Below, in pieces: positions 1-47,886 of a DNA stretch of 64,000 nucleotides. Both the position numbers and the translations under genes were made by a program. Under the pieces are notes generated by a model that worked only from the letters and a program-made list of their open reading frames with translations, did not search any database and was not told where the DNA came from. Every line of letters begins with the position of its first letter. Position 1 is the first letter of the stretch. The stretch comes from Podarcis melisellensis (Eukaryota), in NCBI GenBank assembly GCA_964234715.1, contig OZ174275.1; one strand, 5' to 3'.

Positions 1-103
1 GTGCCAGTTAGCTACTAGGCTATTTTCAAAGTGCTGATTTTGGTGTTTAAAGCCTTATACAACTTGGGACCAAGGTGCCTGAAAGATGGTTTCACTCCTT
101 ATA
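1..103 (+). mobile_element. L2-clade LINE ORF2 C-terminal fragment, duplicate of 16224-16326
   Basis: Translates to an L2-like AIFKVLILVFKALYNLGP motif; 102/103 identical to 16224-16326. Confidence 0.8.
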
Positions 104-330
104 CAGTGGTACCTCGGGTTAAGTACTTAATTCGTTTTGGAGGTCTGTTCTTAACCTGAAAACTGTTCCTAACCTGAAGCACCACTTTAGCTAATGGGGC
201 CTCCTGCTGCTGCCACGCCGCCGGAGCATGATTTTTGTTCTCATCCTGAAGCAAAGTTCTTAACCCGAGGTACCATTTCTGGGTTAGCGGCGTCTGTAAC
301 CTGAAGCGTCTTTAACCTGAGGTACCACTA
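104..330 (+). mobile_element. Tc1/mariner (pogo/Tigger-type) MITE, family copy 1 (chimeric)
   Basis: Left TIR CAGTGGTACCTCGGGTTA after TA at 102-103; right end AACCTGAGGTACCACTA (last base mutated); internal TAACCTGAAG modules; related copies at 16327, 33335, 35988, 47682. Confidence 0.92.
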
Positions 331-2369
331 CACATGTTTGTTTTTGACGTGTAAGTGGCAATATGTGTATGAAAATATGAGACACCACTTAGAGGTGAAT
401 GTTCTTATGAACATAGTATTATGCTGACCCATACCATAGGCTACAAGATTGCTACATTCCTTCATAAAATCTGTACAAGTGGCATATTTAAAGGGTTAGC
501 CGGTGACTCTGCTCCTCTTTAACTAACTCTTTCTCTATTTCCCACCTCCCTTCTCTTTATTTTAGGAATAGTGAAGTGATCTGGATTGAACTTCATGAAG
601 TATGGTTCTAAGGGATAGCTGGCTTTGCGCTCACTGGGCATGGCAGAGCACAAGAAGGTGCTTGGTTGTGCTTGCTCTCTTATTATTACACACATCTGAT
701 TTGGAAGGCAGGAAATCGCATCCATTTGTCTGGAAAACAGGTAGGGATGTGCATATTCTTCCTTACTGTGACTGTGATTCTGTGTGAGTTTAGGCCAGTG
801 GTCCCCAAACATTTACCTCCATGGTCCACTGGAAAATTGTTGCGGGTGTTGGAGGTCCACTTAATGATTTTACCTATCTGTTGTAGCAATTATAATGTAC
901 TGTATGTTTTTTTTAAATATCAAACATCTTAATTTTAGCTCCTGGTTAACTTTGGTGCTACTCCTTTCCTCCGCTTTCAAGTACCTCTTCCTCTTGTCAC
1001 TTCCAATTTGTCCTCTTCACCTTCCAGGTGACAATGCTCCTGCTGTTCTTCACAGGTGTGCAGCAGAGCACCTGAATGAAGCTTGTGGATCATGATTTGG
1101 GAATCCCTAACTTAGATACATTGAGCCAAACTGCCTTTTCAGAATATCAGGTGGTTCAAGCTCTTCAGAACATAGATGAAGTTGACTCCTCTGAGTATAA
1201 ATCTTTCTTCATGTAAAAACAAATTAGTAAGTGTGGGGCTAGATGCCATCTTCTTGATAGACTAGCTTTCCACATGCATTTTTTTTTAAAAAAAAATTGG
1301 CATGGGAGTATGAAGATACCCCTACACATTTTCCCCACCTGTATTCTGGTATAATTCCAGGGGGCCGTACTGCACATTTTACTTGAAGCTGTAGAGGAAA
1401 AAAGATGAATAGTTTCAAAGATGCATAAGATAAAAATAAAAAAACTTTCAAATTTAACCTGCTAGGTGGGCCTACAGTAGTTAAGGACTACTATGTACAA
1501 CTTGAAGGAAGACCAGAGGAGAGAGGTTTGGACAAATTTAAATTCATGCATTTCTTTGGCAGAGTGACCGATTTTTGCACATGAACAGAGCAGGAATTAG
1601 TCTACATCTGCAAGTTGTACAAGGGGAAGTGGTCATTCCCTGAAGCAATCAGCCCATAATTTGAGTTTTAGTAGTTAATCAAGCATAGCTCTTCAAAGTC
1701 ATTCTGGGTTTATGCCAAGACAAAGTGGTGGTTTCTTTCTCCCTCCACCCCACAAGTTTGGGTTTCTGTAGGTTCAAATGCCTTGTTATATCTGGAGTGC
1801 CACATGTTCACCATCCCTGGGACTTCATTCAAAAAATTTCAAGGGACTGGAGGCAAGGGGAACAAATATATCCAACAAAATCTTAAAGAGATGTAAGACT
1901 GACCACTATTCTTTTTTACTGTAGTATCTTAACTTGATGTCCCAAATTATATCACACCTAAAAGATGCCTTAAAGATAAATATGTGTAACAGACTATGCA
2001 TCTCATTCTTTTTTCATTCAAAAAAGGCATAACGTATATTTCACTAACCTTGCCTGTCTTGTCCAACAAGTAGCAAATGCAAAAGCAGTCTTATTGGGAT
2101 TTCTCAAGGCCACCTTTCTTTGCTTACCTCTGACAGTTTAAACAATAAGTTCATCACTTGTTGGTTTAGAAGAAGAAGAAAACTTTGCCTGAGCCTTCCC
2201 CAAGGGTATGTTTATATATAATTATGTCTTCTCTGAGTATGACATAATCAGATACAGCTCAATAACACAAGAATAAAATACCACTAAAATCATAAAAATA
2301 TGATAGAACAATCACAACAAATAGTAGCAGTTCCTACATAACACCCTCCCCAAAAAACTTGACTAGCTT

Positions 2370-2600
2370 AAGTGAAATTCCAACAAGCATGTTTTAATCC
2401 AGAGTCCAAACCTTTGCAGATTTGGAGCACTGGTTGCCTCGAGTGGGGGAGAATTCCACACTGCAAATTACATAGGATTCCTGACCCCATGTCCCTACCT
2501 GGGGGGGGGGGCAACCCAGAGAGTGAGAAAGATCCCTCTTCTGACCGCAGAGCCCAGGTCAGCTGATATGGGGAAAGTGTTCTGTCAAATACCAGGGTTC
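2370..2600 (-). mobile_element. Degenerate L2-like LINE 3' fragment
   Basis: GGGAGAATTCCACA is the reverse complement of the LWNSLP-type motif seen in other L2 fragments here; boundaries approximate. Confidence 0.45.
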
Positions 2601-2706
2601 AAGACAATGAGGTCAATACCAACACCATAAATTTGTCCTGGTGGCATAGAAACAGCCAGTGCAGGCTCCACAAACTAGACGTTACATGACTGTGTAGACA
2701 CACAGG

Positions 2707-2927
2707 CAGTGGCGGAGCTGCACCAGGGGGGCAGGGGGTGGAGAGCAGGCGAGGGCGGGGCTGGCGTGCGTCTTGGGGGCATTGCGCATGTCCTGGGGCA
2801 TGACATGCTGCTTGCAGGGGAGTGGCACCCAGCACGGGCGGGGGGGAGCAGCCACGATGGCACCGCACCGGGATCGCACTGCCAGGGGCGGTGCACTCCC
2901 CCCCGCACTCCTCTTCCTCCGCCAGTG
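2707..2927. mobile_element. Non-autonomous hAT element (Tip100-like termini), GC-rich
   Basis: TIRs CAGTGGCGGAG / CTCCGCCAGTG (1 mismatch) flanked by perfect 8-bp TSD CACACAGG at 2699-2706 and 2928-2935. Confidence 0.88.
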
Positions 2928-5900
2928 CACACAGGTCAATTTTCTAAAGGCTGCATATTCTGCACCAGTTGCAGTTTCCAGAACATCTTCAAGGGAAGCC
3001 CATCACAGAGTTCATTTTGGCAGCATCATAGCTGAAAGTCCAAACCATCACCTTTTTATGTTGAGAAGAGTGGTCAGTTCCACCTAATCAGGTTTACTCC
3101 GTGTATTTTTATTGCACAGAAAGGAGAATGCATGGGGCCAAAGTTTAACTATCTTGTGGGCCAATTGATTCAATTCTAATATATACATATAGCAATATGC
3201 AGTAGAAAATAGGAATCATCTGCCTGTTTTCCTTAATGTCACTTTCAGTCATGTGAATGAGACAATTATTAACATGATTGTTATTATTTGGCTCCTGATT
3301 TCCATGCTCGGTTTTGAATTGGTAGTTTCCTTTTCCCTGTGGAAAATGCAAAGATTCAGGCTCTGCAGCTGCTTTCTTGGACTCAGGCTGTAATGAGCAC
3401 ACTGGAATGCAACAAGCAATAAGTAAGCATGCTTAGGTTTGTAGCCTTGACTTTATATCACAGTTAAACAGAAGCATTGTAAGCACATTGTGATAAATTT
3501 TAAAACTTGGAAGATGTTGAAATTAGATTACATAAGAAATCACCTAATGCAATTTGGAGCATTCTAAAAATAGATATTATTGTCACTTATATTCACTTAG
3601 TGAAAATTTTAAGAAAGAAAAATAGCTGTGTTACATATTTTTCTCAGAGCATAGCACATTCAGCAGAGATATGGAGTGCTGATCTCATGAAGTAGCTTGG
3701 GGGGGAATGTTTCAAGATATAATTTCAGAGTAAGTGAAGTTTCTCATGTTCATTGTTACATTTCTATTGTGAACTGAAAGTGTTTAGAGATGTGCATTGT
3801 TGTTCATAAGAAAGTGAACACCCTCTTTGGGTGCTTCTCCTGGAAATATTTTGACCTTTGCAGGTATGCCTTCATTGATTATATGAAATACCTCAGAAGT
3901 TTTAAAGATTCTTAAAATGCCATTGAAAATGAGCTAATCTCTATTTCTGTTGGTGGTATTTGTGATCAAAACACTTGTGAGGAACATACCGGTTTCTGAT
4001 TTCTAAATAGAAGAAGTATTGGGGTAAACATGGAAAAGTATGTTAAGGGAAACAAAACAGAATATAGCATTTGGTTCCTTTTCCTCACTGATAATTGAAT
4101 TATAGATAATAAGGACAGACATTATTTTGCAGGTCTTTAATGGATATGGTTGCATGCAACAAATGTTATTGTACTGGACATAATTATTTTGTAAGTACTA
4201 TCCTTATTTTAGGATAAATTAACAGAAGCTTGCTTGGAGGATTTTCCTATGCTTTGAATATTTATTTACACAAAATGCTCAACAAAGAGTGACATGGGTT
4301 TTTTTAAATTGTTATTTTGTTATTGTTATTTTTTATTGTGTATTAAATTTGTATACCACACTTCACAACATAAAAACACAAAATAAAACACAAAATACAT
4401 AATAAACACACCCACCCAATATGTTTCTCAGAAATCGCCAATAAAGTTTGAGAGTACTAAATGCTTTTATTTTGGGGAGATAATGGTTTGCATTTTTCTG
4501 CAAGGATCCCAGCTAGATATAGTTTAGAAGCAGGGAAAGGGTGAAAGCAGGGTAAGGGTGAGGAATCTAGCTAAGGAAAAGAAATATTTTTCCCGAAGCC
4601 ATTCATAAAAAGAGTGGTGTGGATCAGCATATGAGGACCACAGAGCTTCCTGATGAACATGGGATCTGACACACAGAGTAATCTCATTCAGGACAGGCCC
4701 GGTTGAGGGACAATACATGGCAAAGGGCAGAGGCAGTGAACTGCCATGAAACACCACAATAGGATTTTTTCGCTGGGGGATCACAAGAGATCTCTGAGCC
4801 AGTCAGTGTCCACTGCAGGAAAGGTAGTGGTTCTATCCTAGAAACTATAAATTTAGACTTAATCCAATTACAGGAGAACATGTTTGCTGGAGGCTGCGCC
4901 TTAATTTCTGTGAAAGAAGGACATCTACTTGCAGTAGATGTAGCACATATTCCAGGGACTGATTAGACTTGCAGTTACATGATCCATTATGCATATCAGT
5001 TATTGTGAGAAATTACCTTATGCAGCAGCCACTCTGGGGATGATCTTCGGTGTGAACCACTGGGGCTTTCCTTAGATAAATGATACTGGGGTTAAGCTTC
5101 CTCTGAATAATGCTGGAGCTGTCTCTGATTACAAGCGCTTCACCATGTTGCTTAGAGCGATGCCAAAATAAATACTTTGGGAAGGATTCACCTAATGAGC
5201 CCCGCCAGTGGAAGTCCTGTCAAAGAGCAGGCAGTAATAACAACAATACAAATAAGAATAGGAAAAACAACAATACCAGCAAAATTTTTATTTTCTGGAG
5301 CTTTTAAAACCTGATTTAGTCTATACTGTTGCAACTTTCATTGCAATTTTTAAATAGTTTTTACATCCATTGCTTATGTGGCTTTATTAGTCAGATTTTC
5401 CCACTTTTTTGTCAACATTAAAATCCATCATTTCCAAAAGTTGAAAAAAATCAATTTAATATTAGAAATCTCACAGAAGTGTTATTTTTCTTGCTGATCA
5501 TTAAATAAATGCATTAATTTATGGTGAGTGAGCCTTGTTTATCCATTTTTGTGTGGCTATGACTTGCCTTCCTCATTTAATTCTAATATAGGTAGCCAAA
5601 TTAAACCAAATATTTACTTACTCCGTTTTTCCACCAAAGCTGATGTGAGAAATGCTCTCCCAGCATTTAGCATAATGTTTTACTGCAGTGACTATGGGAT
5701 CGTGTGGTTATATCGTTTTGGTAAAAAAAAAAGTTATATCAATTAATAAAAGTAGCATTGTCAATGTTTATAGTTTTCTTTTATGTTACATGCCTTTGTT
5801 CCTTCTAGTATGATCACATCTGCCACATCTTGAAACTGCTGTCCTCTCCCTTCTATCTGTGACCCAACATTTGGTGTTAATTATGTCTTATAATTCATAC

Positions 5901-5994
5901 AGTTTCCAAAGGGCAAAACACCATCTGGTCATGGTCTTAAAAGAAAAACAACATCAACAACAAGTTTTGGTCATCCGAAATGTATTGCATTCAT

Positions 5995-6105
5995 CAGGGA
6001 TAGGGTAACACGTGGTGTTGTTGGACCCCAAATCTCACCAACCCCAGCCACCATGGGTTGTAGTCTGGCAAAATCTGAAAGGCCACGGGTTCCTCACCCA
6101 CTCCT
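5995..6105. mobile_element. Degenerate copy of the ~135-bp palindromic hAT MITE
   Basis: CAGGGATAGGG...CATCTG-like segment...GGCCAC...GGTTCC similar to the 54033-54168 element; heavily decayed. Confidence 0.55.
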
Positions 6106-6795
6106 GCCATACCTCTAAAGTCACCAGCTAACAGAAATTCTGTACCCACCCTATTACCTAGCTCTTAACATGTTCTTACCCACTGGAAACTGGTCCATTA
6201 GGGCAAATGGAGGCAATGTCCCACCAACTTCAGTCTGTACTTAGTCCTCACCTGGCTGCTGCCTTCCATTCAGCTACTCACAGTGTGAGCTTTGTCAGTC
6301 ATTGGTCCTGTCTCCACCTACTGGTGGTCTTCCAGCCTTCTGCATTAGCCACCATGGCTCTTAACGGTACATCTTTGCACTTCTTAATATATTCTTCACT
6401 GTGAGGTTTTATGAGGTTGTTTTAAAAAAACCCTCTGAGATATTTATTTTACTGTGTGTGTGTGTTTAATATTTCCACAGTTATAGATATTCAGAGCACA
6501 GCACCTGACAGACATTCATTAATGGCTTAATATCTTAATATGTCCAGATTGATTGCAACTGAACAGATCCATATACACATTCCCCCCACCCCACAATTCA
6601 AAATACCCCTGCTTAGCATTTTAAACAAAATTATAGATAGCAACAGTGATGGGTGATTTTAGTAGGGCTAATTTTCCTCAGCATCCCTCTGTGTGCCACT
6701 GCAGTGCGATTCAACCAAAGTTAAGCTTTGTGACTTTAATAGAACTGATTTGTAAGAATGCCCTGAAATCTCTCCCACTGAATTCAATGGGATGC

Positions 6796-6796
<1 letters not shown>

Positions 6797-6843
<47 letters not shown>
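6797..6843. repeat. (GAAA)n microsatellite
   Basis: About 11 perfect GAAA units; explains the KKERKKER ORF tail. Confidence 0.98.
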
Positions 6844-6844
<1 letters not shown>

Positions 6845-7794
6845 GATTCACTTTCACTGGATTATAATGTATGATTATTACATTCAAATGTACATTTTTT
6901 TTCTTTTTTAAAAAGCATAATTAAAAGTGTTTCACTTTATCACAGTTTGGAATATGTATACTGGGCAGAAACTCGCAGGCTTTGCTGAAGCAGAGTTTCC
7001 TTTTATGCCCTGTGTCTTGGAAGGCTGGTCATGAAAAATCACTTTTCAAATTAGAACTTAATAAAAAACTTTCCTGCTCCGAACAGTAAGCCCTACTCCC
7101 TATGCGATTAGTGGTTTCATTTCTTTCTCAGCAGTTGGGTAATGATTATAGCTCCAGATGCTGCGGGAGCGATAAAGAGATTGATTAATTTCACTTGAAA
7201 GGGCATATGTTCAAAGAGAATCCAATCGGAACACCACGAAAAGGGTGCTGACATCCTTGCAGCAAGAAAGCTTAACACAACTTGCTCCCCGACTGTTTTT
7301 CGGGAAAAGGATCCGCACACAAATATTATTCATCAAGTCAACATATGAAACGTTTAGCTTTTGCCTACTCAACAATGAGAGAGGTTTCATTTCTGGATGG
7401 TAGTTTTTTCGTGAGTTTATGCTGAATCATTCTAAAACACACACACACAACACAACACAACACAATAGAGGTTCTGCTGTACTGGAAACTGCCAGCGAAA
7501 CTAGAGTGAGTGCCTTCAGAGCTGACCTAAGCATTGAAGTATATTTGTTGAATGATTTATATGGATAACCCAAGGCTAATTGCTCAATAATATTGCTGTG
7601 TCTGAAGATCAGTTGAAATGCCTGTGAATCAGCATTCTTGTAAGGATGATGTTTTGGAGGGAGGGAGGCAGCCCAGCATCAGCCTGTGCTACAGTTTAGT
7701 TGTGTCAGCTTGTACCATTGAACCAGGCAGAGTAAAGCCTAGCTTTTCTCCAGTACCTTCTCCCACAAATTCTAGTTTTAACAGTACAATAAAT

Positions 7795-8145
7795 CAGATG
7801 GGGGACCCCTTAGGCCTGGGCCACCCAAATATGGTCCTTCAAACAGCTGTCTGGCCCTTGGAAACCTCCTTCGTTGGTCCTGCTTTGCAACCCAGCTTTT
7901 TTGAATGACTAGAATGTGTCCTTGAATTCTGATATTGCTTGCTTATCTGGGTGGAGAACAGAGGGGGGGGGCATGTGAGGGTGAATAAAAAAATAGGCTA
8001 CTGGACAAAGATAAAAACAACAACAACATTTGTCACTCTGTTCACTTTTGCCTCTGGTCCTTCCCACCACCACTGCCAAATGGTCCTTGGAATATTGCCC
8101 AGGAGGAATGTGGCCCTTGAAGTAAAAAAAGGTTCACTACCCCTG
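7795..8145 (+). mobile_element. ~350-bp non-autonomous hAT-like element
   Basis: Ends AATGTGGCCC...AAAAGGTT...CCCCTG; internal blocks (GTCCTTGAATTCT, TTTGCCTCTGG...CCCACCAC) shared with 53405-53735. Confidence 0.65.
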
Positions 8146-8569
8146 AAGTAGGAAGTAGGAAGGAACGTGCTGGACTGTTCACACAGCAACTAAGCTTTGT
8201 GTGTATGGGTTAAAAGAGAAATCCTTAGCTATGTGGTCTGGAATGGTAAGCCCCACCTCTAAATGCTTAGAATTTGTCCCCATGCCCAGTAATTTTACTC
8301 AATATCCTGCCAACTTCTGTGGGCAACAAACGGGTTCTGTGAAAGGGGCCAGGGATACTCACCTCAGCTTTAGTTATTGCAGATTCTTCCACAACCCACT
8401 TTTGCTTTTTTCGGTATTTTTTTTAAAATTTCTGGTTTAAAAAAGAAACCCTTGCAAATCATTCAATGGCCTATTACTTTTTGTATTTAAGTATATATTT
8501 ACTGCGCTTTCATAAACAAGCGGTATACAACATATTAAAAAAAACCCCTACTATGACATCAATAAAGAC

Positions 8570-8890
8570 TGATTGCTTTAAAAAAAAAACCATCCCAAAG
8601 GCCTGCCTGAATGGCACAGATTTTTAAAGGTATCTGAAAGGAGGCAGAAAGTAAATCCTGAAGGACTTCTGTTGGCAAGGAGCCCCACAGGGCAGGGCCT
8701 GCCACACCAAAAGCTTGGTTCTTGGTGAAGGCCAGCTGCAATTCAACATCATGGGGGAATCACTGAAAGTGCCCCGTAAGGACATGTCAGTTATCAAGGA
8801 TAGATGATAAGCAATCAGGCTAATGTACTTTGGGCCCAAGTTGTTTAGAATTAAGCACAGGAACCTTGAACCTAACCAGGTAGCAAATTG
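8570..8890 (-). mobile_element. L2-like LINE 3' fragment
   Basis: Minus-strand ORFs give LNNLGPKY and AFGVAGPALWGSLP, typical of L2 ORF2 C-terminus. Confidence 0.7.
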
Positions 8891-10691
8891 GGAGCTTACC
8901 AGTAGACCCCTCTCTGTCTTTGGACTGCCTTTGCTCTTTGCCTTCATCTGTGCCCTTCTGCCTCACCACAATAACACACAGTCTTAGATTATCATCTCAA
9001 ATAGTATGTTTTCATATTTCCTTTTTAGATTTTATTAGTCATATTTTTGCATAATGAGAAAAAAATTGATTAGTTTCAGCAAGCTAAGGCATCTAGATAG
9101 CAGTGGCTGGTGATAATCTTGCCGTTAAACTGCATCTTCCCACGATAGCTTATCATATATTACTATTAATCTAATCTATATTTTGCCTGACAATTTCATT
9201 TATATGGAATACATTATGGAACTATAATCCTCACATAAGTTTCCAAAATCCATTATTATTTTCCCCAAGTTTAGCCTAGTCAAGAAACATTCTCAACTTT
9301 CCTCAGTGTGAAGTTAATGTCAGGCAACATTAAATTCCAGACCAGTAACAAGGTTAAAGTCCATTCTCTTTTGATCCTTCAGAAATGGTTCTATGTGTCA
9401 TTTTATATGCCTTCTTAATAGGGCAAATCATTTTTGCTTCTAGTCCCTTGGAAGCCCTGAGACATCACTGTCTTTAGTTATGACATTTTATGCGTATGGA
9501 AGATTCCATAATTAAATTAGTAATGTGCATTAATTATACATTTCTTTCCATAGTAGTTGGCTCTATTAGAAAATGGCAGAATACCATCAGAAAATTTAAA
9601 AATATATAGAGGTAATTAAAATCTTTAAAAACTATTCTAACCAGCTTTCCATCTGTTAAGCTTTACTGGGGTGTGTGGTATTACACAGAAATTGGTAAGC
9701 AATGCATTTTAGGTGTTTTTTTCCTGTGTATAATTTCTGAACTCATGACGAAATGCATGTTGTTATTTGTACCATTTCCAAATCCAAGCAGCTCATGTTC
9801 TTGACACCGTCCAGTCAATTTTCAAACTGTTCTGTTCCAACTCCATTGATATGATTTGAGGCCTGAGCGGCAGGGCTACTGTGGTTCATAGATAAGATGT
9901 GGGGTTTTTTCTGGATCTTTGTATTCTCCACAGTCGCTTAGCAGCAGCTGATGGAGCACAAATTGATTTTCAGTGGGACTGATTAAGGTTTATTTTTTAT
10001 CAATTAACTGTCTTGCTTTTAACTAATTAATCTGTCAAGGTATATAATATATTATTCTAAAGGGGACATTTTGGGAATGTTAAATATAAGATGCTCTTAA
10101 TTAAATAACAAAAGAAAATTATTCAGGCTGCAATTTTCACCAGGTTACTGTATAATTTGCCCTACCAAAGGCAACAAAGGTTGGATTGCGCTTAAAATTG
10201 GGGGCACCTTGTTGGCTTGAGAGCATACATGTAATAGGCACCTTACTGGTTTGAATCCATCTTACGTCTATTTCCTAACTCAAGGGTCAGATACGCAGTA
10301 TTTTGCACCACATTTTTACAAACAACATTTGGGTTTAATCTTATAACAAATGTATTATTAAAGTCCACAATAGGGAAAAGACACTATCACTGTTTTCAAC
10401 CCTACTTGGGAAAGTGAAACAGTGCTTCTACACGGTTGGGAAAGGACCTATGCAATCATGAAACAAGCCCTGGTGGGGCTTTAGACTTCTTTTTCTAGAA
10501 CAAGGATAGGGAACCTTTTTCAGCCTTAGGGCTGCATTTCCTCATGAATAACTTTCCAGTGGGAGGTAGGGGGAGTCTTTTCCCTTGGGTATTTCTGTGT
10601 TTCTCCTTTTGATGTACAGAGCAAGGCCACCTCCAGCCTTCCCTGTCCTTCCTGTAGAGAGAAACATGCCACACTGGTTATTTCTATTCTA

Positions 10692-10942
10692 CAGCCGTAC
10701 CTTGGTTCTCAAACACTTTGTGACTCAAACGTTTTGGCTCTCAAATGCCACAAACCTGGAAGTGAGTGTTCCGGTTTGCAAACTTTTTTTGGAAGCTGAA
10801 TGTCCGACGTGACTTCCATGGCTTCCAATTGAGTGCAGGAAGCTCCTGCAGCCAATCGGAAGCTGTGCCTTGGTTTCTGAACGTTTTTGGAAGTTGAACA
10901 GACTTCTGGAACAGATTACGTTCAAGAACCAAGGTATGACTG
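10692..10942. mobile_element. Tigger/pogo-like MITE (second family)
   Basis: TIRs CAGCCGTACCTTGGTTCTCAAAC / GTTCAAGAACCAAGGTATGACTG with TA on both sides (10690-10691, 10943-10944). Confidence 0.88.
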
Positions 10943-10944
10943 TA

Positions 10945-11042
10945 CTAACTCCCATCATCCCTGAGCTCTGGTCTTGCTAGCTAGGGGTGATGGGAGTTGT
11001 AATTCAACAACATCTGGGGACCCACAGGTTGAGAAAGTCTGG
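10945..11042. mobile_element. Right part of the palindromic hAT MITE
   Basis: ACTCCCATCATCCCTG...GATGGGAGTTGTA...AACATCTGG...CAGGTTG matches the 54033 family; left arm absent. Confidence 0.8.
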
Positions 11043-13735
11043 CTTTGAGGCTTCTAGCTCTAACCAACAAACACGTATGGTATCTCTCTCTTCAAATGTC
11101 TTCAGTATTCCTGGACTAGCCTACGGTGCTTTGGTGTCCTTGAAATACGAACATATGTCCCTGCACTCTCAGTGCTTAATTCTACCTCCCCTCCTTTGAA
11201 CAATCATTAACATCTCCCTGCTTATCCCTGGGAGTTGAATTGTTCTGAACAGCATGCTCCTGATCGCCTGCTGGCTCTTTAGAAGCTTGACTCTCCACCT
11301 TTTTATTTTAAGGGCAAGCAGTCTAGTTCCATCTGGCTCAAGTGGAGCCCATTCCTTTTGTACAGACCCAGCGCCTAACCACATCCCACTGTGTCTTAAC
11401 AAAGTCAAACCCTTCTCCCGACACTACTATATCATTCAGACTACACAGCTGAGTCTTTCTAGTTGGCATTGTGCAGGGAACCTGTCTAGGTGGCCCTGTG
11501 CATGGAAACTGTAGCATTTCAGAGAAAGTCATGTTGAAGATCTTAGCTTTCAACATCCTACTTAGCTGGCTCTCCAGGACCTTCTGCAAGCTGCACACCC
11601 ACCACACACCTAGCTATCAAAGTCGCTAATGATTGAATCACCCACTACAAGGATCTTCCCTTTCCTCAGGAGGAGTATTCTAGGTGCAAAGGGATAACTG
11701 TTCATCTCCCAAGTAGTGGGCCCCTTCTAAGGGATTATTTCTGTCTTTCTTTGTCTTCTGTCTGTCTACCTCCCTCTAGACCCTCATACTTCATGGCAAG
11801 AGGGGAACTATCATCCTTGTATTGGAATGCAGTTATCACACCCCCAGAGGTCTTGTCTGCCAGCCTCTCTGCCTCTCTCAGCCACCTTGACCATGAGGGA
11901 ATGACCCAAGAGCTCATTGCACTGAATACAAATTTACAATTTCTGTCCAGTAGGCAGAGAGTCATACTTGTGACAGTCTTGGCAGTATACTAGAAAAATC
12001 CCACACCCTGCTGTCTTTCAACCTGCAACAGAAAAAGAAAATGCTTCATGTAGATTAGCAGGATGAATGAAGGTACAAAACAAAAATTTTAGACATGGCA
12101 GCTGGAGAAACCCTTGGCATCTAAATGTAGGCCATAAAAGTAGGAAAAACAACAACCTTTGGTTCAGCCAAGACACAATAGGAGATTAAAACTGCATGAG
12201 TGTGAACAATTGAGCAAAGCAGGAAGAATGTAGCCAGAGAGGTAATGATATTGGACTGTAGGCGAAAGAGAGAGGTTGGGCAGAAAGGGGGACATGGTGA
12301 TGGGAGAGAAGAGGGGGGGAAAAATATGAGGAGCTTGCTTTAATATACCCCTATGGTTCCCAGCTAGTCAAATTATGTCAGCATCTTCAGGATTACTTCT
12401 GTTCTTTCCACATTTACCACTGCTGTATTGCAGGTCTGCATAACTAATCAGCCAGCAATCATATTTCAACCCACTATCCATGAAATGAGTCTCACCAGAA
12501 ATTTAGGCTTCCTCCCATTTTAATGTCTGCCTGGGACTAGTGAAATGGGGGTTATCTGTCAGACGATGATATATGGAGTGTAATCCAACATAATGCTGTT
12601 ATGATTGCTCCATCAGCACAAGCATTTCTGCTCGCCAGACAGAATGATAGTCCCTGTCTCCTCACCCTGCATGCTACTCTGGGGGTTCTTCAGAACCCCC
12701 CCCCCAGCTGATTTGGAAGGGGCGGGACACACACCAGGGGAGGAGATGAGAGAAATCCCATTGCACTAGTGGGGCTCATTGTGTTTGCTCCCTCCAATGC
12801 AACTATTTAGTACCCTAAATAGTTGGTGCCCTATGTTTGGCCTGCTGGCTCTCAAGCGGGGCCTAGTTTTTGCCCTCCTAGAAAGTTATGTGAAATCAGA
12901 ATACAATTTAGGAAGTTTAGCAATGAAGGTGTACTAGGGTAGCTCCAGTACTTAACATTTTCACCTCTTTAGTGTGTATTGATGGGCGTTTGACTGCTGA
13001 CCTTTACTAGAATACCTTCTGAAAATGCACAGACGGTGGATGAATGATATTTGAGGATAACAAGCCTATGACACTGGAATAAATTGGGCTTTTGAGGAAG
13101 ATAAGGGATTAAAGCTGTCCCCTGCAAATGGATCTTTCTGAAAAACAGCATCTGTACGTACTTCTTAAAGTCTCAAGGGATGGTGTTGCCACACCTGTAC
13201 ATGAATTTTGCACTATTACCATAAATAATAAAAGCTAATCTTGGGATTTTTCTACTTTTAATGTCATCTCCATCAGCATTTATCCTCATACTTGCTGTGG
13301 AAACAGCAAAAGGATGTATGTACCGCAAATTAAAAAGTTGCCAGGTGAATATCTTCACCTTTGCTGATATTCTCATTAGTTTGTCCTTGATTGATTCTGG
13401 GAGGGGTAGACCAGCTTTTGGAGCCCTCACAATGATTTAATCATTACAGCACACAAGGTCCCAAATCAGATTTGAGGTACATTTATAAGTGTGCGGGGGG
13501 GGGGGGGACTAGTGAACAGCTGCAGCGCATATGAGGTGGCTGATAACTGATAGCACCCAACTGGCCTGTTACTAATGGGATTCCCTCTAGGCCTTCTCTG
13601 AAAGATCATAGGAATGAAAGTAAAAGCACTATTTCATCTGCAAAATATCTGGGGCTTTATTCACAGATACCTGTATGCACACAGGTGCTATATGCTTACA
13701 GTGCCATGTGCAAGATGAAGATTCACCGAGGCTTT

Positions 13736-13905
13736 TTCTTCTTCTTCTTCTTCTTCCTAAACCATGGTTTTGCATATAAGAATATATGCAATACACCTCT
13801 GTGTGTGTGTGTGTATCTGTATCTGCAAACATATGCAGATATATACTACAATATAAGAATGTATATATATGAATATATGCAAACATATGCAAATATATAC
13901 TACAA
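13736..13905. repeat. (CTT)n, (TG)n and an imperfect 28-bp direct repeat
   Basis: CTT run at ~13736-13756, TG run at ~13800-13814, TGCAAACATATGCA(G/A)ATATATACTACAA at ~13824 and ~13878. Confidence 0.85.
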
Positions 13906-14683
13906 AATGAAAACGTTGCTGTATCATAGCAATAATTAAATACTCATAGACACTAGAAAACAATCCCCTTTTCCTTTTCATCTTTTATGAAAACAATAAT
14001 ACTAAATCATTTTCTTTGTACTTGTGTTACACATTATTTGTGCACGTGTATATGTATGTATCAGGAGAAGCTCTTCAATGTCCCATGCTTTGAGCTGCAT
14101 AACTTAAGCCTCTTGGTAGAAAATAAAATAAAAGGACTGCTCTCAAGATCTACTGACTTCTTTCCCTTTGGGGAACTGTGTAACTACAGCTTCTCAGGGA
14201 AGAGCCTTCCAGATCTGGCATGGTTCCCCTCATCCAGATTGCCTCCTCCTAGGCAGAGGAAGGATTATTAAAAAATGCTTCTTTTTCCAGTTGACCTTTG
14301 CCTTCACAACAAGGTTGTTGGAACTCCACTGTGTCCTGTACTGCTTTTTTTTTTGAAAGTCCTAAATCTTAGCTTGTTCTCTGGTCAGCTGAACTAAGTG
14401 ACTGCACTCTCTATTTAGAACTAGTAACAGAATAATTAAATAAAAGCACTTTTAACTTAAGCGACAGTTTCAGTATTAACACCAGTGACCCATGGTTAAC
14501 TATGTGAGCCTCAGCAGAACATTCTAATTGAAACATAATAAGTCAATTTCATCTGCCACTATGTAATAGCATGGAGAAACTTGTTTTGTGGTTGTTTTTT
14601 TTAACCCTGGCTGGAAAGAAGCATTTCAGTTTAAAGTGTTGTAAATTTAAACAGGAAACCAAGTAGAGAAAAGCAGGACTCCA

Positions 14684-14702
14684 CATCGCCATCTGGTGGC
14701 AC
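14684..14702 (-). promoter_or_regulatory. CTCF core motif
   Basis: Minus strand reads GTGCCACCAGATGGCGATG, a close match to the CTCF core CCACCAG(A/G)(T/G)GGCG, with the CpG retained in unique sequence. Confidence 0.7.
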
Positions 14703-14899
14703 AAGGTTATATCGCATATACAACACATATAAATCGCTTTTTCTTTACCAGTCTAGCTGAGTCCCCTGTCTTTTCACCATTCCTGATTCATGCAAAATGG
14801 CTCACAGTGTCCCATGGGCTAAATAAATCTCATGTCCTTATCGATGAGCTGTCACATGAACATAAAAAATCGTCAACAGGATTTTTTCTTTAGTGTGCA

Positions 14900-14992
14900 A
14901 CAGCTCACGCCTAACCGTGTCTACTCAGAAGTAAGTCCTATTGAATTAAGTGGGGACCTACCCCCTAATAAATGGGGTTAGGATTGCAGCTC
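14900..14992. mobile_element. Short ancient palindromic repeat (related copies at ~23565-23648, 37070-37155, 40092-40172)
   Basis: Shared pattern CTACTCAGAAGTAAGTCC-ATTGA-...-TGGGAC...TAGGATTGCAGC; class uncertain, MITE-like. Confidence 0.65.
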
Positions 14993-15679
14993 TTAGAAAC
15001 TTGGGAAGAGAATGTTTTCCCCCTCTTGGTGTATGTTGCTAAATTCTTGATGCTGATCATTTGTGCAGTTTCATACACTGACATCTTATACAAAAAATGT
15101 AGATGGAGGAAATCATTTGATGCTCTGCTTGCTTTAACATTTCTATGCATTTCAAAGTGTGGTGTGTATCTGACCCAATTCTCTCTTCAAATTCGTGGGG
15201 GGGTTATGTGGAAAATATTACTTTAATTAATTACTTGTTTTGATCTGGTTTTTTTTTTTACTCTGATGGCTGAAATTTCATGTACAATTTCATCCACTTC
15301 TAATAATACAAGAAACACCCTTCCATTGCTTCCCTGGAGATGCTATTGATGTCCTCTCCTTTAAGGCATACATTACAAATTAAATGTGAGAACCTGCAGC
15401 TAAAAGAAATTGCTCTAAGGCACTGATTTGCCGGGATGAAAAATCAATAACAGTTTCATTAAGGAAAAGAAGGATGGGAAGTTTAGACATGCTTTTCTTT
15501 TTCCTTTTTATGAAAAAAAGAAAAGAAAGGGGACAATCACAGATCATTTTGCTCTGTTGTATCCTAAGAAATTAGTTACACCACACAGCACTGATTGGGA
15601 GGATTTTCAAGCCTGTACGACTGTCCTGAAACAGCCATCCAAAGTAGAAAAGGCAGATTAAGAAATCTTGCTATGTAGA

Positions 15680-16700
15680 AGAACATGGGGTGAGGTGCTC
15701 TCAATTGCTGATGATATCCAGTTCTGCTTTCCTGTAACATCTGAATCAGGAGAGGCTGTGCAAGCTCTGGACTGGTGCCTGAATTCAGCAGTGAGCTGGA
15801 TGGGGGACAATAAACTGACTCTGAATCTTGGCAAAATGGTGGGATTGTGGGTGGTTCCCTAGTCCAGGTAATTGGTCAATTTCCTGCTTTGGAAGGGGGT
15901 CATCCTTCCCTTGAAAGAGCAGGTTCATAATCCAGGGCTTCTCCTGGATCCATCTTTATCACTAGAGACCCAGATGACCTCAGTGGCTAGGAGAGCCTTC
16001 TGCCAGCTACAGGTGGGAAGACAGCTACCACCATATCTGCACCAGGGTAGCTGGACCGCTGTCATCCATGCTTTGGTAACATCCATCTGTATTTGGGTGT
16101 GCTGCATTTTGGGTTGCCCTTGAGGTTGGTGCAGAAGCTGTAGCTGGTGCAAAATGCGGCAGCTGGACTGCTCACTGGGGCAGGATATTGCCAATGCATC
16201 ACCTCACTCTTGAAAGATTTGCAGTGCCAGTTAGCTACTAGGCTATTTTCAAAGTGCTGATTTTGGTGTTTAAAGCCTTATACAACTTGGGACCAAGGTG
16301 CCTGAAAGACGGTTTCACTCCTTATACAGTGGTACCTCGGGTTAAGTACTTAATTCATTCCGGAGGTCTGTTCTTAACCTGAAACTGTTCCTAACCTGAA
16401 GCACTACTTTAGTTAATGGGGCCTCCTGCTGCTGCCGTGCCGCCGGAGCACGATTTCTGTTCTCATCCTGAAGCAAAGTTCTTAACCTGAAGCACTATTT
16501 CTGGATTAGCGGGGTCTGTAACCTGAAGCGTATGTAACCCGAGGTACCACTGTATACCCAACCAACCTCCACACTCTGTAGGTGAAGGCCTTCTGCAGCT
16601 ATCAACGTATCAAGTAGCTAGTTCCACACAGTGTAGGAATTGGGCCTTTAATGTTGTAGCAACTTTGGGATTCCCCTCCCCTTGAATATTAGCTGTCATC
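15680..16700 (+). mobile_element. L2-clade LINE ORF2 fragment (RT end and C-terminus), interrupted by a MITE
   Basis: ADDIQ (YADDTQ-like), VIHALVTS, LVQNAAAGLLTG, ITSLLKDL, FKVLILVFKAL motifs with stops and frameshifts. Confidence 0.88.
16327..16552 (+). mobile_element. pogo/Tigger-type MITE copy 2
   Basis: TA-CAGTGGTACCTCGGGTTA...TAACCCGAGGTACCACTG-TA; the L2 host continues on both sides. Confidence 0.95.
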
Positions 16701-19700
16701 TTGGTTGTCTTTTAAGTTAGGACATTTCCTAGTCTCTATCGGTATTATAATAGTTTTTAAGATGGATTTTATTGTTTTATCACATGTCGTTTGCCTCCTG
16801 GGCTCCTCGGGGTGTGTGTGTGTGGGGGGGGTAAGTTTGAGGCAGCTTAAATCTATTTTCATATATAATAGGTTTACACAATCTGTAGCCTCCATGCTAT
16901 ATGTGAGCCACCAAGCATGTCTTTTGGCTTGGTAACAGTCTTTCTTGTTGGCTTGCCTGGGATTGTATAAATAAAATGAAAGCAACTAGAAAACCAGACT
17001 ACATAGTTTATGGACTCCATAAAAATGTGGGGGGACCACCTGTTGTGCAAATATATCACATTTTGAGTCTTTTGACCAGGCCTTTTGTGTGTGTGCCATG
17101 AATGTTTAATGTTCATTTTCCTCTATGCTGGGATGAGGGAGGTTAGGATGAGGGCAGGTGGAAGTGCCACGGGTGGAATCCCTGTTGGCAGCAGTCACTG
17201 GAAGACTCCAAGCATAGTGCTCTGGAGCTAAGGAGGGGCTGCGTAGTCTAGGATCTGTTGGATCTCAAGCTGGATCCGCTGCTGTTGTGTGATGGCATTG
17301 GACTTGTTTGAGGCCCTGCTACTCTGTAAAGCCTTGACAGGCAACAGCCAGGGTTTGGGATGCCCCCAAGTTGGCGGAGAAGAAGGAACGTGTCTCATTG
17401 TTTGCAAGATTATAAAGTGCCTGTAAACCGCAAAATCCACTTATTGCTTGATAACAGTTCCACATGTCCTTGCTGTATGCAAGGTGTTTTGTCTTTTTGA
17501 GGCATTAGACTTAGCCAGCCCTGCAGCTGCCAGAGCATTTCAGAGTTCTGTAGCTGAGATTTATCTGTGCACATTTGGGTTGTAAAATGTCTCGTATCGT
17601 ATGCGGTGAACAAAACAGAGAACACTATCATGTACGGCATATTAATCCCAGGTCCTGTTCAGATGTCACAAAAGCAGATGGCATGGGATAACCAGTGCTA
17701 TTTAAAGGTCTTTTGTAGCAGGCCAGACTTAATGCTTTCCTTCTCCTCCCTAAGGGCTTCTATACCTCCTGCTGACATCAGTATCAATCATGGAAAGATG
17801 GGAGTAATGAAAATGGAACTCTGGCAATCGCTCGATGCCATAAAGGTAGAAAGGTAAAGGCATCATGAGCGGGTCAATGCCACTGGCTTTACCAAAACAG
17901 GCAAAGAAAACAAATGTACTCTAGACTCCAGCCCAAATTGCAGTGATCATGGCAGTGCAATAATATCCAAAAGCATTGATGTTTCCACTTCTGCTGCTGA
18001 TTAGAAATATTATTTAGGTTTTATAATCAAGTTTATATTTGCCTGCTGCCATTTAAAAATTCTTCCCGACTTGCCCTTCTCAACTACTTAACTGAAAAAC
18101 CAGCCACACCAGGTCCCTCTATTTCCAGGGAAATCAAAGGGAGAAAGTGAACGGCCACTCCACTGGCCAAACTGTTAGCAACTTTTGGCTCCTCCTCTCC
18201 TTTGGCTGTGTTCCATCCCAGCTGGTCCTTAGAAGAAGTTTGTTACTATAAGAAGTAGCACCTGAGGTTGTTTTCTCTCTCTACCTTCTGTGAAAATGGA
18301 TGCTGGACAAGATAAAACTTTGCTCTGCTTGAGGAGTGATCTTCTTGGGTCCTTACTGATCTACTAAAGTGAGACCTCTACTAGTAGAAAACAGTGAACT
18401 TGAAGAAAAAGTTAAGAATTTAATATGTACGTGTTCAAATAGTCCCTTTAAAACACGGTCTCAGTTTTATTGAGTCAGATCAATCTTCTGTTTGGGAGTC
18501 ATTCTCCAGCCTTCTTAGGAAGCTCCTGCATTTTCGTAAATTTGTGGGCACTCATTAATTGCATTCAGATCCTTAAAAGCCTTTTGCTATTCATGTAAAA
18601 GCTGAATTGCCGTCACAGCAGAAATAGGGAACCTCCCATTGTCTATTGGTGCCTCAAATAGAAAGCTGAAATGTTGGCATCAAAGGACAGATGCTAGACT
18701 ACCTTCTGCAATTGAGCTGTAAGATCAAGAACATTGCCAACTTGGAATGTGGAGAACAAGAAAGAGAATGCCTTTCACATGTGCAGCATCTGCCATTATA
18801 TAGGTAGCATTTAATGGTAATCAGAATTTCCTTTGCCAGAATAAGGTTTGTTGTATACCACGTCCATTCATCCACTGCACGCAGATATTGGTTACAATCT
18901 GAAATTGTCTTAAAGCGCAGAATATAAACTCACAATTTGTGTATATTTAGAGAATGTATGTCTTTCAGTTTTACATCTATCCTATACTTTTTGATGCCAT
19001 TTTAGCTTTGTATTATTATGCCTTGGTGATAATAACACATTGAGACAAATGCTGTCAATGCATATGGCAGTTATAGGCCTGTTTAGTGTTCCCATTATAC
19101 ACTCCCATTCTGGAAAATGTAATGACCAACCCATTAAAATGTACTTAGGACTGATTATTTTGGTCAGCAGCAAGATTTATTTGCAAAAGCCTGCATGGCT
19201 TTCTCTCTGGCTTTTTAATTTTAGCATAAAAACTGAAAGGAGAGCACAAGTGAGCATGAGAATGAGCCTATTTCATAGCTGTATTGTTTGAGTCTTTTCA
19301 GGGCTGCTTGGTTTTTAGGATTATGCTGTGGAATGGACAATTTACTTGGGTATCCAAATACATATCTACCCAGGAGAATAACCTTCCTGTTAAGACACAG
19401 TATTTTTACAGGTTTTAATCCCTCAACCTTTCTGTGATGGCTGTGTTTCAGCTTTGTGGCTGTTCAGATTTATAGATCAGGAGTAGAAAACAACATCTTA
19501 CACAGCCAGTTTCACAATGAAGCAAAGGCAACTTTTGACTTGTTATTCTTGAATAGCATACTAATTCATGCTACATGGAAAAATGATTTAGAGACTTAGG
19601 ACACTTTTTAAAATGGTTTGTGATGTGGCCTGCCGATAGAGTGGAAAAATTACAATTCTATTGCTAAACTGGTTTACCTCTTTCAATCCAAAGCAGTTTT

Positions 19701-20751: not shown

Positions 20752-20890
20752 NNNNNNNNNNNNNNNNNNNNNNNNNNNNNNNNNNNNNNNNNNNNNNNNN
20801 NNNNNNNNNNNNNNNNNNNNNNNNNNNNNNNNNNNNNNNNNNNNNNNNNNNNNNNNNNNNNNNNNNNNNNNNNNNNNNNNNNNNNNNNNN
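20752..20890. other. Assembly gap (139 N)
   Basis: Run of N. Confidence 1.
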
Positions 20891-33334: not shown

Positions 33335-33576
33335 CAGTGGTACCTTGGGTTACATACGCTTCAGGTTACATACGCTTCAGGTTACAGACTCTGCTAACCC
33401 AGAAATAGTGCTTCAGGTTAAGAACATTGCTTCAGGATGAGAACAGAAATTGTGCTACGGCGGCATGGCGGCATCAGGAGGCCCCATTAGCTAAAGTGGC
33501 ACCTCAGGTTAAGAACAGTTTCAGGTTAAGTACGGACCTCCGGAACGAATTAAGTACTTAACCCGAGGTACCACTG
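33335..33576 (-). mobile_element. pogo/Tigger-type MITE copy 3
   Basis: Both TIRs intact with TA TSD; opposite orientation to copies 1 and 2; extra 16-bp GGTTACATACGCTTCA module. Confidence 0.95.
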
Positions 33577-35987: not shown

Positions 35988-36229
35988 CAGTGGTACCTTG
36001 GGTTACATACGCTTCAGGTTACATACGCTTCAGCTTACAGACTCCGCTAACCCAGAAATAGTGCTTCAGGTTAAGAACTTTGCTTCAGGATAAGAACAGA
36101 AATCGTACTCTGGCGCTGTGGCGGCAGCAGGAGGCCCTATTAGCTAAAGTGGTGCTTCAGGTTAAGAACGGTTTCAGGTTAAGAACAGACCTCCGGAATG
36201 AATTAAGTACTTAACCTGAGGTACCACTG
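35988..36229 (-). mobile_element. pogo/Tigger-type MITE copy 4
   Basis: Both TIRs intact with TA TSD; 242 bp, same subtype as copy 3. Confidence 0.95.
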
Positions 36230-37319
36230 TATACTTGTACGCTTCCTTCTCTGCAAGGAGTGTTTCATCTTATTATTCTACTGTCTCCAGAAAGACTTTT
36301 TTTGGGGGGGTGAGTAAATAGAGAGAATAATGGTTTTAAATTTGCTCTTTCTTTTGGCACATGACCAGTGGTTGTATTGATGGAGTCAATGATTAAAAAT
36401 ACAGTTATAATGAACACAGCTATTTTTTTTTTGCTTTGTTTTATTTCAGTATGAAAGAGCAGAAAAATAATAATATAAACCCAAACAAGTTTTGAAAATA
36501 TAACAGCAGTGTACATTTCTGAAAATACAGAAATGATTTTTTAGAAGTACATTTATCATGGTATTTCTTTTAATTTGCACTCCTGCTGTACTACAAATGT
36601 AATAACCATCAAAATGAAAAATGCAACAGATTGATAATACCATTGAGTTTTAATTAAAGCACTGAATTGAAAAAGGCCCAGATGGATAACAGGATAATGT
36701 AGTTATAACCCTGTTATGAAAAATGCTGGGCTGCCAGTTATAGCATCTTATAAATAAAATGTATGCCAAAATAACATAGTTTTTTTTAGAAGACTACCCA
36801 AAAATTAATCATTTAAGTCTGCAAAACAGATGGTTTCTCTGTTTTATTTGGTTTGTCTGAAAGGCACAGATCTCTTTAAATCAGTAAATGTTCCATTCCT
36901 CCCAATTGCCCAGATCCCTCTCCAGCTACTCCATCCAGTTCTGTCACTACTGGTTCACAGTTGTAAAATCTCTGAAACATTAAACTCTGAAAGGTCAGTA
37001 GGTGTTTGTATCTGACTATTTAGCATACTGAAATACTAATGGAGTTTAAAACAGAAAGCAAGTACTGCAACCATACGTCTTGTCTACTTAGAGGTATGCC
37101 CAATTGATTTCAGTGGGATCTACTCTCCAGTGGGTGTGCATAGCATTGCAGCCTGAATATCTCATGATGGCTATAAAACCTGTGTCTCCATCGCAGGTGG
37201 CATTGTGCCCTGTTCAACTATTGCTATCTGTGACATTGCTGTCACTAACTATATTAAAGGAAGTCACCATCCACATCTGAAAACCACTCAGCGATGAAAG
37301 CCATATGCCACTGCTATGT

Positions 37320-47681: not shown

Positions 47682-47886
47682 CAGTGGTACCTCAGGATAA
47701 GAACTTAATTCGTTATGGTGGTCCGTTCTTAACCTGAAACTGTTCTTAACCTGAGGTACCACTTTAGCTAATGGGGCCTCCCGCTGCCACTACACGATTT
47801 CTGTTCTCATTCTGAAGCAAAGTTCTTAACCCGAGGTACTATTTCTGGGTTAGCGGAGTCTGTAACCTGAAGGGTCTGTAACCCGA
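47682..47886 (+). mobile_element. pogo/Tigger-type MITE copy 5, right TIR truncated
   Basis: Left TIR after TA; ends GTAACCCGA, lacking GGTACCACTG-TA. Confidence 0.9.

What the first reader, a model, noticed from the sequence alone, without database searches (positions are those of the whole stretch)
1..16552. Chimeric MITE marks a probable duplication junction at 16,223-bp offset
Seen: bases 1-103 match 16224-16326 at 102/103, and both carry a MITE at the identical TA. The left halves of the two MITEs share a variant (CTGTTCCTAACC) absent from copies 3-5 (CTGTTCTTAACC). The right half of copy 1 has the other subtype's diagnostics (AACCCGAGGTAC, GTCT, as in copy 5), whereas copy 2 has AACCTGAAGCAC, GTAT (as in copies 3 and 4). 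After copy 2 the L2 host resumes; after copy 1 unrelated sequence follows. Inference: non-allelic recombination between two MITEs created a hybrid copy, so ~16 kb, including the CTCF site and candidate enhancers, may be tandemly duplicated upstream of the window.
Basis: partly seen in the sequence, partly recalled or inferred. Interest (0 to 1): 0.72.

Follow-up and report, generated by a model that had tools for sequence, protein, structure and literature searches.

The report
MITE-bounded duplication junction, upstream half unseen
A small jumping-gene relic at the very start of the window has, on its left, a near-perfect copy of the DNA that sits left of a sister relic 16.2 kb downstream. 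This is the ordinary signature of a repeat-mediated duplication, but the second copy lies outside the window and could not be checked.

Summary
Bases 1-103 equal 16224-16326 at 102/103, and both stretches run into a roughly 226-nt TA-flanked MITE at the same TA. A decayed LINE remnant resumes after copy 2, while unrelated DNA follows copy 1.

The 'hybrid in the middle' reading does not hold. Copies 1 and 2 are 132/133 identical up to base 133 and differ at 19 sites in 134-325. The best change point is at base 133 (permutation p 0.006; non-CpG sites 0/128 vs 11/185, p 0.0035). The left and right MITE halves are equally diverged. Copy 1's body is no closer to copy 2 (91.7%) than unrelated copies 3 and 4 are (91.7%, 91.2%). 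Copy 4 shows the reciprocal subtype mosaic with no flank duplication, so the mosaic is family-wide.

The join therefore lies in the first 30 nt of the MITE or at its tip. My best reading is a recent direct duplication, probably tandem with a 16,223-bp period, made by MITE-MITE recombination or template switching, a known kind of event.

The predicted upstream copy is outside the window. The scan has noted other unchecked kb-scale tandem duplications in this genome, but not this one.

The parts
1..103 (+). Recent copy of the left flank of MITE copy 2. It is a piece of a decayed LINE ORF2 3' remnant and includes the same in-frame TAG. It is cut by the window edge.
   Evidence: 102/103 identical to 16224-16326. 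No third copy in the window.
104..133 (+). Exchange interval. This is the 5' TIR tract in which copies 1 and 2 (and 4) are identical. The join between 'copy-2 flank' and 'another MITE's body' lies here or at the MITE tip.
   Evidence: 30/30 identical. The maximum-likelihood change point of c1/c2 divergence is at base 133, permutation p 0.006.
104..330 (+). MITE copy 1, full length, 227 nt. The 5' TIR is perfect. The 3' TIR (311-330) has 3 mismatches and ends CCACTA followed by CACATG, so there is no clean TA.
   Evidence: Body 91.7% identical to copy 2, the same as for unrelated copies.
331..16326 (+). Unit Y (15,996 bp), the DNA between the two MITEs. Under the tandem-duplication reading a second copy of it lies directly upstream of the window. 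It holds no MITE or solo TIR of this family.
   Evidence: TIR scan has no hit between 331 and 16326. Self-blast shows no other offset-16223 match. Duplication of this unit is inferred, not shown.
15690..16326 (+). Left part of the decayed LINE-like ORF2 3' remnant that hosts copy 2. It is readable only across three frames with several stops.
   Evidence: Translations. No Pfam family for three pieces, so the 'L2' label is unverified.
16327..16552 (+). MITE copy 2, full length, 226 nt, with TA on both sides. This is the parental insertion into the LINE remnant.
16553..16800 (+). TA plus the right part of the same LINE remnant, which continues after copy 2. It is absent after copy 1.
33335..33576 (-). 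MITE copy 4, used as a comparator. It is the reciprocal subtype mosaic: copy-5 states on the left, copy-2/3 states on the right.
35988..36229 (-). MITE copy 3, used as a comparator. It has the same subtype states as copy 2 in both halves.
47682..47886 (+). MITE copy 5, used as a comparator. It is 3'-truncated, has an internal 11-nt gap, and is the most diverged copy.

Best explanation
Copy 1 is an old, independent member of a TA-flanked, Tigger-like MITE family. Its original left flank has been replaced by a recent copy (about 1% diverged) of the left flank of copy 2. Copy 2 is the next family member downstream, 16,223 bp away and in the same orientation. The join lies within the first 30 nt of the MITE (104-133), where the two elements are identical.

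The most likely cause is a TE-mediated rearrangement. Unequal homologous exchange, or microhomology-mediated template switching, between an upstream MITE ('R1') and copy 2 would produce a direct tandem duplication: R1 - Y - copy 1 - Y - copy 2. Here Y is 331-16326 and copy 1 is R1's body carrying at most 30 nt of copy 2.

Shown: the flank identity, the position of the join, the equal orientation, the full-length junction element, and the greater age of the MITE bodies compared with the flank copy.

Inferred: that homology continues for the whole 16 kb upstream, that a third MITE sits at its far end, and the molecular pathway.
For: (1) Bases 1-133 match 16224-16356 at 132/133 (95% CI of divergence 0.02-4.1%). 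Bases 134-325 differ at 19/192 (CI 6.1-15.0%).

(2) CpG decay does not explain the jump. Non-CpG sites differ at 0/128 against 11/185, p 0.0035.

(3) Copy 1's body is 91.7% identical to copy 2. Copy 2 against copies 3 and 4 gives 91.7% and 91.2%. Each of copies 1-4 carries 4-6 private changes. The MITE bodies are therefore independent old insertions, and only the flank plus TIR is young.

(4) Copy 1 reconstructs a full-length element and is in direct orientation with copy 2. [quoted passage not shown]

(5) The DNA after copy 1 is contiguous with the DNA that ends at copy 2's left flank, with no other family member between them. 'End of Y - repeat - start of Y' is the junction of a head-to-tail duplication.

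(6) The host is a decayed LINE remnant with stops and frameshifts, and the window holds no other DNA-level copy. So 99% identity means a DNA-level duplicate and not two members of a repeat family.

(7) Length-biased sampling (inference). A window edge cuts a 16.2-kb upstream copy with chance about 0.25, but cuts a 0.3-1 kb patch with chance 0.004-0.015.

(8) There is no N run at or near the junction. The only N run is 20752-20890.
Against: The upstream copy of Y has not been seen. Only 133 nt of shared sequence is visible, so the whole size estimate rests on geometry and on the sampling argument.

No read evidence exists for the junction.

A 30-nt identical tract is short for classical NAHR, so a replication or repair template switch may be the real pathway.

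The two derived bases shared only by copies 1 and 2 (169 C, 211 T) are not explained by a join at or before base 133. They would have to be subfamily traits or parallel changes (211 is a CpG transition).

Copy 1 lacks a clean TA on its right side, which needs a 2-nt loss or two substitutions.
Confidence: 0.5

Rival explanations
1. Assembly artefact. Two haplotypes of one 16-kb stretch were laid head to tail (false heterotype duplication), or two contigs were joined through the shared MITE end. The hybrid junction would then not exist in the animal.
For: One mismatch in 133 nt is in the range of allelic difference. The switch falls in a 46-nt exact tract (88-133), which is where an overlap or graph join could happen. 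The assembly has at least one N run 4 kb further on. VGP-grade assemblies still hold 0.3-2.3% false duplication, mostly on the same scaffold (PMC9516828).
Against: False duplications are most often separated by a gap, and there is none in 1-16552. A join on 30-46 nt is unlikely for long-read assemblers. The technology of this assembly is unknown to me.
Confidence: 0.2
2. Short local patch. Only a short piece of copy 2's left flank (hundreds of bases) was copied next to a resident MITE. This could happen by ectopic break repair or gene conversion that started in the MITE homology and ran into the flank, or by a small composite that moved. No 16-kb duplication would exist.
For: Only 103 nt of flank is visible. 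The nearest same-orientation family member is the natural repair template. Composite MITE-plus-host units have been noted elsewhere in this genome by first readers (unchecked).
Against: A window edge would cut such a short patch only with chance 0.004-0.015, against 0.25 for a 16-kb copy (inference). No second MITE or TIR lies upstream of copy 2 within 16 kb that could bound a small composite donor.
Confidence: 0.12
3. Transposase-made tandem duplication. This would be alternative transposition using ends of two nearby elements, as shown for maize Ac/Ds. The join would be exactly at the MITE tip, and no third MITE would sit at the far end.
For: The join can be placed at the MITE tip as well as inside 104-133. 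The MITE keeps a perfect 20-nt 5' TIR. A related, reportedly young element with similar ends lies in the same window. PMC3744419 shows that this route gives tandem direct duplications with an element at the junction.
Against: Both MITEs are old (4-5 private changes each, about 8% apart). Copy 1's 3' TIR has 3 mismatches and no clean TA. The invariant TA target gives no diagnostic footprint. No transposase source was examined.
Confidence: 0.08
4. The crossover lay in the middle of the MITE, so copy 1's left half descends from copy 2 and its right half from another subtype.
For: Two derived bases are shared only by copies 1 and 2 in the left half (169, 211). Four copy-5-type states sit in the right half. 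In 134-235 the c1-c2 pair is the closest of all pairs (91.1% against 83-89%).
Against: There are 10 differences in the 132-nt left half against 1 in the 103-nt flank (p 0.025). Left and right halves are equally diverged (p 0.81). The best change point is at base 133. Copy 4 is the reciprocal mosaic, and 48 of 78 site pairs fail the four-gamete test. The 'diagnostic' motif is one of several TIR-like internal repeats, so parallel change is easy.
Confidence: 0.07
5. Two independent MITE insertions at the same TA of two members of a repeat family, so no local duplication event at the MITE.
For: All five copies sit after ATA, which suggests a weak target preference.
Against: The host is a decayed, frameshifted LINE remnant with no other DNA-level copy in the window, yet the two flanks are 99% alike and share the in-frame stop. 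The host does not continue after copy 1.
Confidence: 0.03

Closest known systems
Transposable-element-mediated rearrangements (Alu/Alu-mediated duplications and deletions with a chimeric Alu; PMC9675761, PMC6071635)
   Same: A full-length repeat sits at the junction. The partner repeats are in direct orientation and only about 90% alike. A short identical tract (30 nt or less here; median 17 bp in humans) marks the switch point.
   Different: The repeat is a cut-and-paste MITE in a lizard, not a SINE. Only one junction is visible, and the duplicated segment itself has not been seen.
Tandem direct duplications by alternative (reversed-ends) transposition of maize Ac/Ds (PMC3744419)
   Same: A DNA-transposon copy sits between two head-to-tail segments, and the join is compatible with the exact element tip.
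   Different: No 8-bp-type footprint is available because the TA target is invariant. The elements here are old and partly decayed. Nothing shows transposase action.
False heterotype duplications in vertebrate assemblies (PMC9516828)
   Same: Two adjacent, nearly identical copies on one scaffold, with divergence in the allelic range.
   Different: No gap lies between the copies. Depth and k-mer tests could not be run.
Composite / Pack-type MITE units that carry host DNA
   Same: A MITE is physically linked to a copied piece of host DNA.
   Different: No second element end bounds the copied flank within reach. The MITE body next to the copied flank is not a copy of the donor's MITE.

Membership tests
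Homology-driven TE-mediated tandem duplication (TEMR-HR / NAHR type) | The junction repeat reconstructs one full-length element | tested here: met
   Copy 1 is 227 nt and copy 2 is 226 nt. Both have TIR matches at both ends.
Homology-driven TE-mediated tandem duplication (TEMR-HR / NAHR type) | Partner repeats in direct orientation | tested here: met
   Copies 1 and 2 are both on the + strand.
Homology-driven TE-mediated tandem duplication (TEMR-HR / NAHR type) | Identical tract (microhomology) at the switch point | tested here: met
   Bases 104-133 are 30/30 identical, and the change point is at 133.
Homology-driven TE-mediated tandem duplication (TEMR-HR / NAHR type) | The segment between the repeats is present twice, head to tail | not testable with these tools
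Ten ORFs of 4-15 kb are not in the protein collection. The findings index takes no negative coordinates.
Homology-driven TE-mediated tandem duplication (TEMR-HR / NAHR type) | A third repeat copy at the proximal end (the NAHR prediction, PMC3744419) | not testable with these tools
   It would lie about 16.2 kb upstream of base 104.
   10/132 differences against 1/103 (p 0.025). Left and right halves do not differ (p 0.81).
   Copy 4 is the reciprocal mosaic. 48 of 78 informative site pairs fail the four-gamete test.
Tc1/mariner-pogo (Tigger-like) MITE | Terminal inverted repeats | tested here: met
   The 20-nt TIR is found at both ends of copies 1-4 with 0-3 mismatches; 13 hits against 0 expected. 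DNA fold z-scores are -2.7 and -3.3.
Tc1/mariner-pogo (Tigger-like) MITE | TA target-site duplication | tested here: met
   Copies 2 and 3 have TA on both sides. Copy 1 has TA on the left only. TA is the Tigger TSD (PMC9219625).
Tc1/mariner-pogo (Tigger-like) MITE | Ends shared with an autonomous pogo/Tigger element that encodes the transposase | not tested
   I found only a resemblance of ends (CAGTGGTRCCTCG and TTAATTCGTTCCG) to the non-coding element at 45901-47230.
L2 LINE (host of copy 2) | Recognisable L2-clade ORF2 or 3' end | tested here: inconclusive
   The three-frame translation reads like the tail of a LINE ORF2 by eye. Pfam finds no family in three pieces. No repeat library is on hand.
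False (assembly) duplication | A gap between the copies | tested here: not met
   There is no N in 1-16552. The only N run is 20752-20890.
False (assembly) duplication | Haploid-level read depth and haplotype-specific k-mers | not testable with these tools
   No runs were obtained.

The most novel reading that the evidence does not exclude
The duplication is real and was made by transposase, not by recombination. Alternative transposition using the ends of two Tigger-like MITEs would have produced a 16-kb tandem duplication in a vertebrate germ line. That would be a natural counterpart of the maize Ac/Ds reversed-ends events, and would be recognisable by the lack of a third MITE at the far end.
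Probability: 0.08. Interest if true: 0.55.

Novelty: new member of a known kind. Interest (0 to 1): 0.24.

Why it matters
If the 16-kb duplication is real, it is a clean, datable example of a DNA-transposon relic seeding a segmental duplication in a lizard. Whatever regulatory DNA lies in 331-16326 would then be present twice. This kind of event is well known from Alu and L1 in primates and from Ac/Ds in maize, so it adds a case and not a principle.

The practical lesson for the scan concerns evidence. A shared or 'foreign' diagnostic base inside a MITE is weak evidence for a local hybrid when the family is mosaic throughout. The profile of divergence against the flank is the better test.

Tried and rejected
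Look-ups by place and by the words MITE, duplication and CTCF gave nothing on the upstream DNA.
3. I tried to reach the upstream DNA through the look-up of encoding contigs. Ten ATG-started ORFs from 4-15 kb were first screened by exact look-up, and none is in the collection. No ORF of 130 aa or more in the window looks like a real gene. I dropped this route.
4. A Pfam scan of three pieces of the host remnant found no family, so the L2 label stays unverified.
5. CpG hypermutability as the cause of the flank/MITE divergence contrast is rejected (non-CpG 0/128 vs 11/185).
6. A composite flank-plus-MITE repeat family is rejected, because the MITE bodies are no closer to each other than to unrelated copies.
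7. A strict CTCF core pattern has no match in the window.
8. A paper search for a named lizard family of this MITE found nothing usable.
Full report
**What is there.** The window opens with 103 nt that recur at 16224-16326 with a single difference, T87 against C at a CpG. In both places the stretch ends ...CCTTATA and runs straight into a MITE that starts CAGTGGTACCTCGGGTTAAG. A blastn self-comparison gives one colinear match, 1-329 = 16224-16551, at 93.9% on the + strand with offset 16223. Nothing else in the window has that offset.

A scan for the 20-nt terminal repeat sets the element limits (13 hits, 0 expected from shuffles):
- copy 1: 104-330 (+)
- copy 2: 16327-16552 (+)
- copy 4: 33335-33576 (-)
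- copy 3: 35988-36229 (-)
- copy 5: 47682 to about 47886 (+, 3'-truncated)

No end of this family lies between 331 and 16326. Copies 2 and 3 have TA on both sides. Copy 1 has TA on the left but ends CCACTA followed by CACATG on the right, which needs a 2-nt loss or two substitutions. The ends resemble those of the non-coding Tigger/pogo-like element at 45901-47230 (noted earlier by the scan). TA is the Tigger target duplication (PMC9219625).

**The host.** Around copy 2 the sequence from about 15690 to about 16800 reads, across three frames and several stops, like the tail of a LINE ORF2. It continues on the far side of copy 2, so copy 2 is an ordinary insertion into an old LINE remnant. Pfam finds no family in three pieces of it, and no repeat library is on hand, so the label 'L2' is unverified. 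What matters here is that the remnant is decayed and that the window holds no other DNA-level copy of it apart from bases 1-103. Bases 1-103 even share its in-frame TAG. A 99% match is therefore a DNA-level duplicate of this particular remnant, not a second member of a repeat family.

**Where the homology ends.** The divergence profile places it elsewhere.
- Copies 1 and 2 are 132/133 identical up to base 133 and then differ at 19 of about 192 positions. The first differences are at 134, 137, 138 and 159.
- The maximum-likelihood change point is at base 133 (permutation p 0.006). The confidence intervals of the two rates do not overlap: 0.02-4.1% against 6.1-15.0%.
- CpG decay does not explain this. 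At non-CpG sites the counts are 0/128 against 11/185 (p 0.0035).
- The left MITE half (10/132) is as diverged as the right half (p 0.81) and more diverged than the flank (1/103, p 0.025).
- Over the whole body, copy 1 is 91.7% identical to copy 2. Copy 2 is 91.7% and 91.2% identical to the unrelated copies 3 and 4. Copies 1-4 carry 4-6 private changes each.

The two MITE bodies are therefore old, independent family members, and only the flank plus the first 30 nt is young. The join lies inside 104-133 or exactly at the MITE tip.

**The 'chimeric' pattern.** Among 13 informative sites, copy 1 groups with copies 2 and 3 at 146, 178 and 180, and with copy 5 at 266, 269, 271 and 310. Copy 4 does the reverse, although it has no duplicated flank. 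In all, 48 of 78 site pairs fail the four-gamete test. The variable motifs are internal copies of the TIR-like unit, which recurs several times per element, so parallel change or conversion within and between elements is easy. The mosaic is a trait of the family, not a mark of a local crossover.

Two derived bases are shared only by copies 1 and 2 (169 C, 211 T).

**Best explanation.** The visible arrangement is: end of Y, then a full-length repeat, then the start of Y, followed 16 kb later by the same end of Y and a same-orientation repeat. This is what the distal junction of a direct tandem duplication looks like.

It meets the criteria used for homology-driven TE-mediated rearrangements in human genomes (PMC9675761):
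- a chimeric element that rebuilds a full TE;
- a short identical tract at the breakpoint (median 17 bp there, 30 nt or less here);
- partners in direct orientation (91% of such deletions and duplications there);
- partners only about 80-90% alike.

Because the identical tract is short, a replication or repair template switch is as likely as classical unequal crossing-over.

A sampling argument favours a long upstream copy over a short one. A window edge cuts a 16.2-kb copy with chance about 0.25, but cuts a 0.3-1 kb patch with chance 0.004-0.015. The window does not start at the end of its piece, because another note lies 22.6 Mb before it on the same piece. I put 0.5 on a real, recombination- or template-switch-made duplication of roughly the full 16.2 kb.

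**Rivals.**
- *Assembly false duplication or mis-join (0.2).* One mismatch in 133 nt is in the allelic range, and the switch falls in a 46-nt exact tract. However, false duplications usually have a gap between the copies (PMC9516828), and there is no N in 1-16552.
- *Short copied patch from ectopic repair (0.12).* This fits what is visible but is disfavoured by the sampling argument.
- *Transposase-made duplication by alternative transposition (0.08).* It would give the same junction but no third element at the far end (PMC3744419). The age and decay of both elements speak against it.
- *Independent insertion at the same TA (0.03).*

**What could not be done.** The findings index does not reach upstream. 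Ten ORFs of the window are not in the protein collection, so no public contig could be fetched around them. The N run at 20752-20890 was left as it is.

**Verdict.** The kind of event is well known, and interest is low to moderate. First readers of this scan have noted other kb-scale tandem duplications elsewhere in this genome (unchecked), but not this one.

Noticed in passing
window 20752-20890: A run of 139 N, the only one in the window, about 4.2 kb after copy 2. It shows that the assembly, or the masking, is not seamless near the finding.
   Followed up: no
window 33331-33580 and 35984-36233: MITE copies 4 and 3 lie 2,653 bp apart, both on the minus strand. Both carry an extra copy of the 16-nt GCGTATGTAACCTGAA-type unit before the 3' TIR that copies 1, 2 and 5 lack. 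They are 90-92% alike, so they form a subfamily and are not a recent duplicate.
   Followed up: partly
window 259-278 (within copy 1): Copy 1 keeps an internal TIR-like motif (18/20 to the terminal repeat) that matches the 5' TIR better than its own 3' terminal repeat does (17/20). In the DNA fold the 5' end pairs with this internal motif. Copies 2-4 have the derived CCTGAAGCAC state there.
   Followed up: partly
window 45901-45925 and 47205-47230: The ends of the hairpin-filled Tigger/pogo-like element begin TA-CAGTGGTGCC, and one end carries TTAATTCGTTCCG. These are the same opening and sub-terminal motif as the 226-nt MITE, so the two families probably answer to related transposases.
   Followed up: partly
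window 47682-47886: MITE copy 5 lacks the 3' terminal repeat and has an 11-nt internal gap. It is the most diverged copy (14 private changes), yet it keeps the TIR-like ancestral state at both variable motifs.
   Followed up: no
window 8624-8947 (-): By eye, the 107-aa ORF here reads like the same kind of LINE ORF2 tail (…NNLGPKYIS…) as the host of copy 2, but blastn and tblastx do not detect it. If this is right, ordinary members of that LINE family in this window are far more diverged than the 99% pair.
   Followed up: no
whole window: The strict CTCF core pattern CCASYAGRKGGCRS has no match on either strand (0.06 expected). I did not examine it further.
   Followed up: partly
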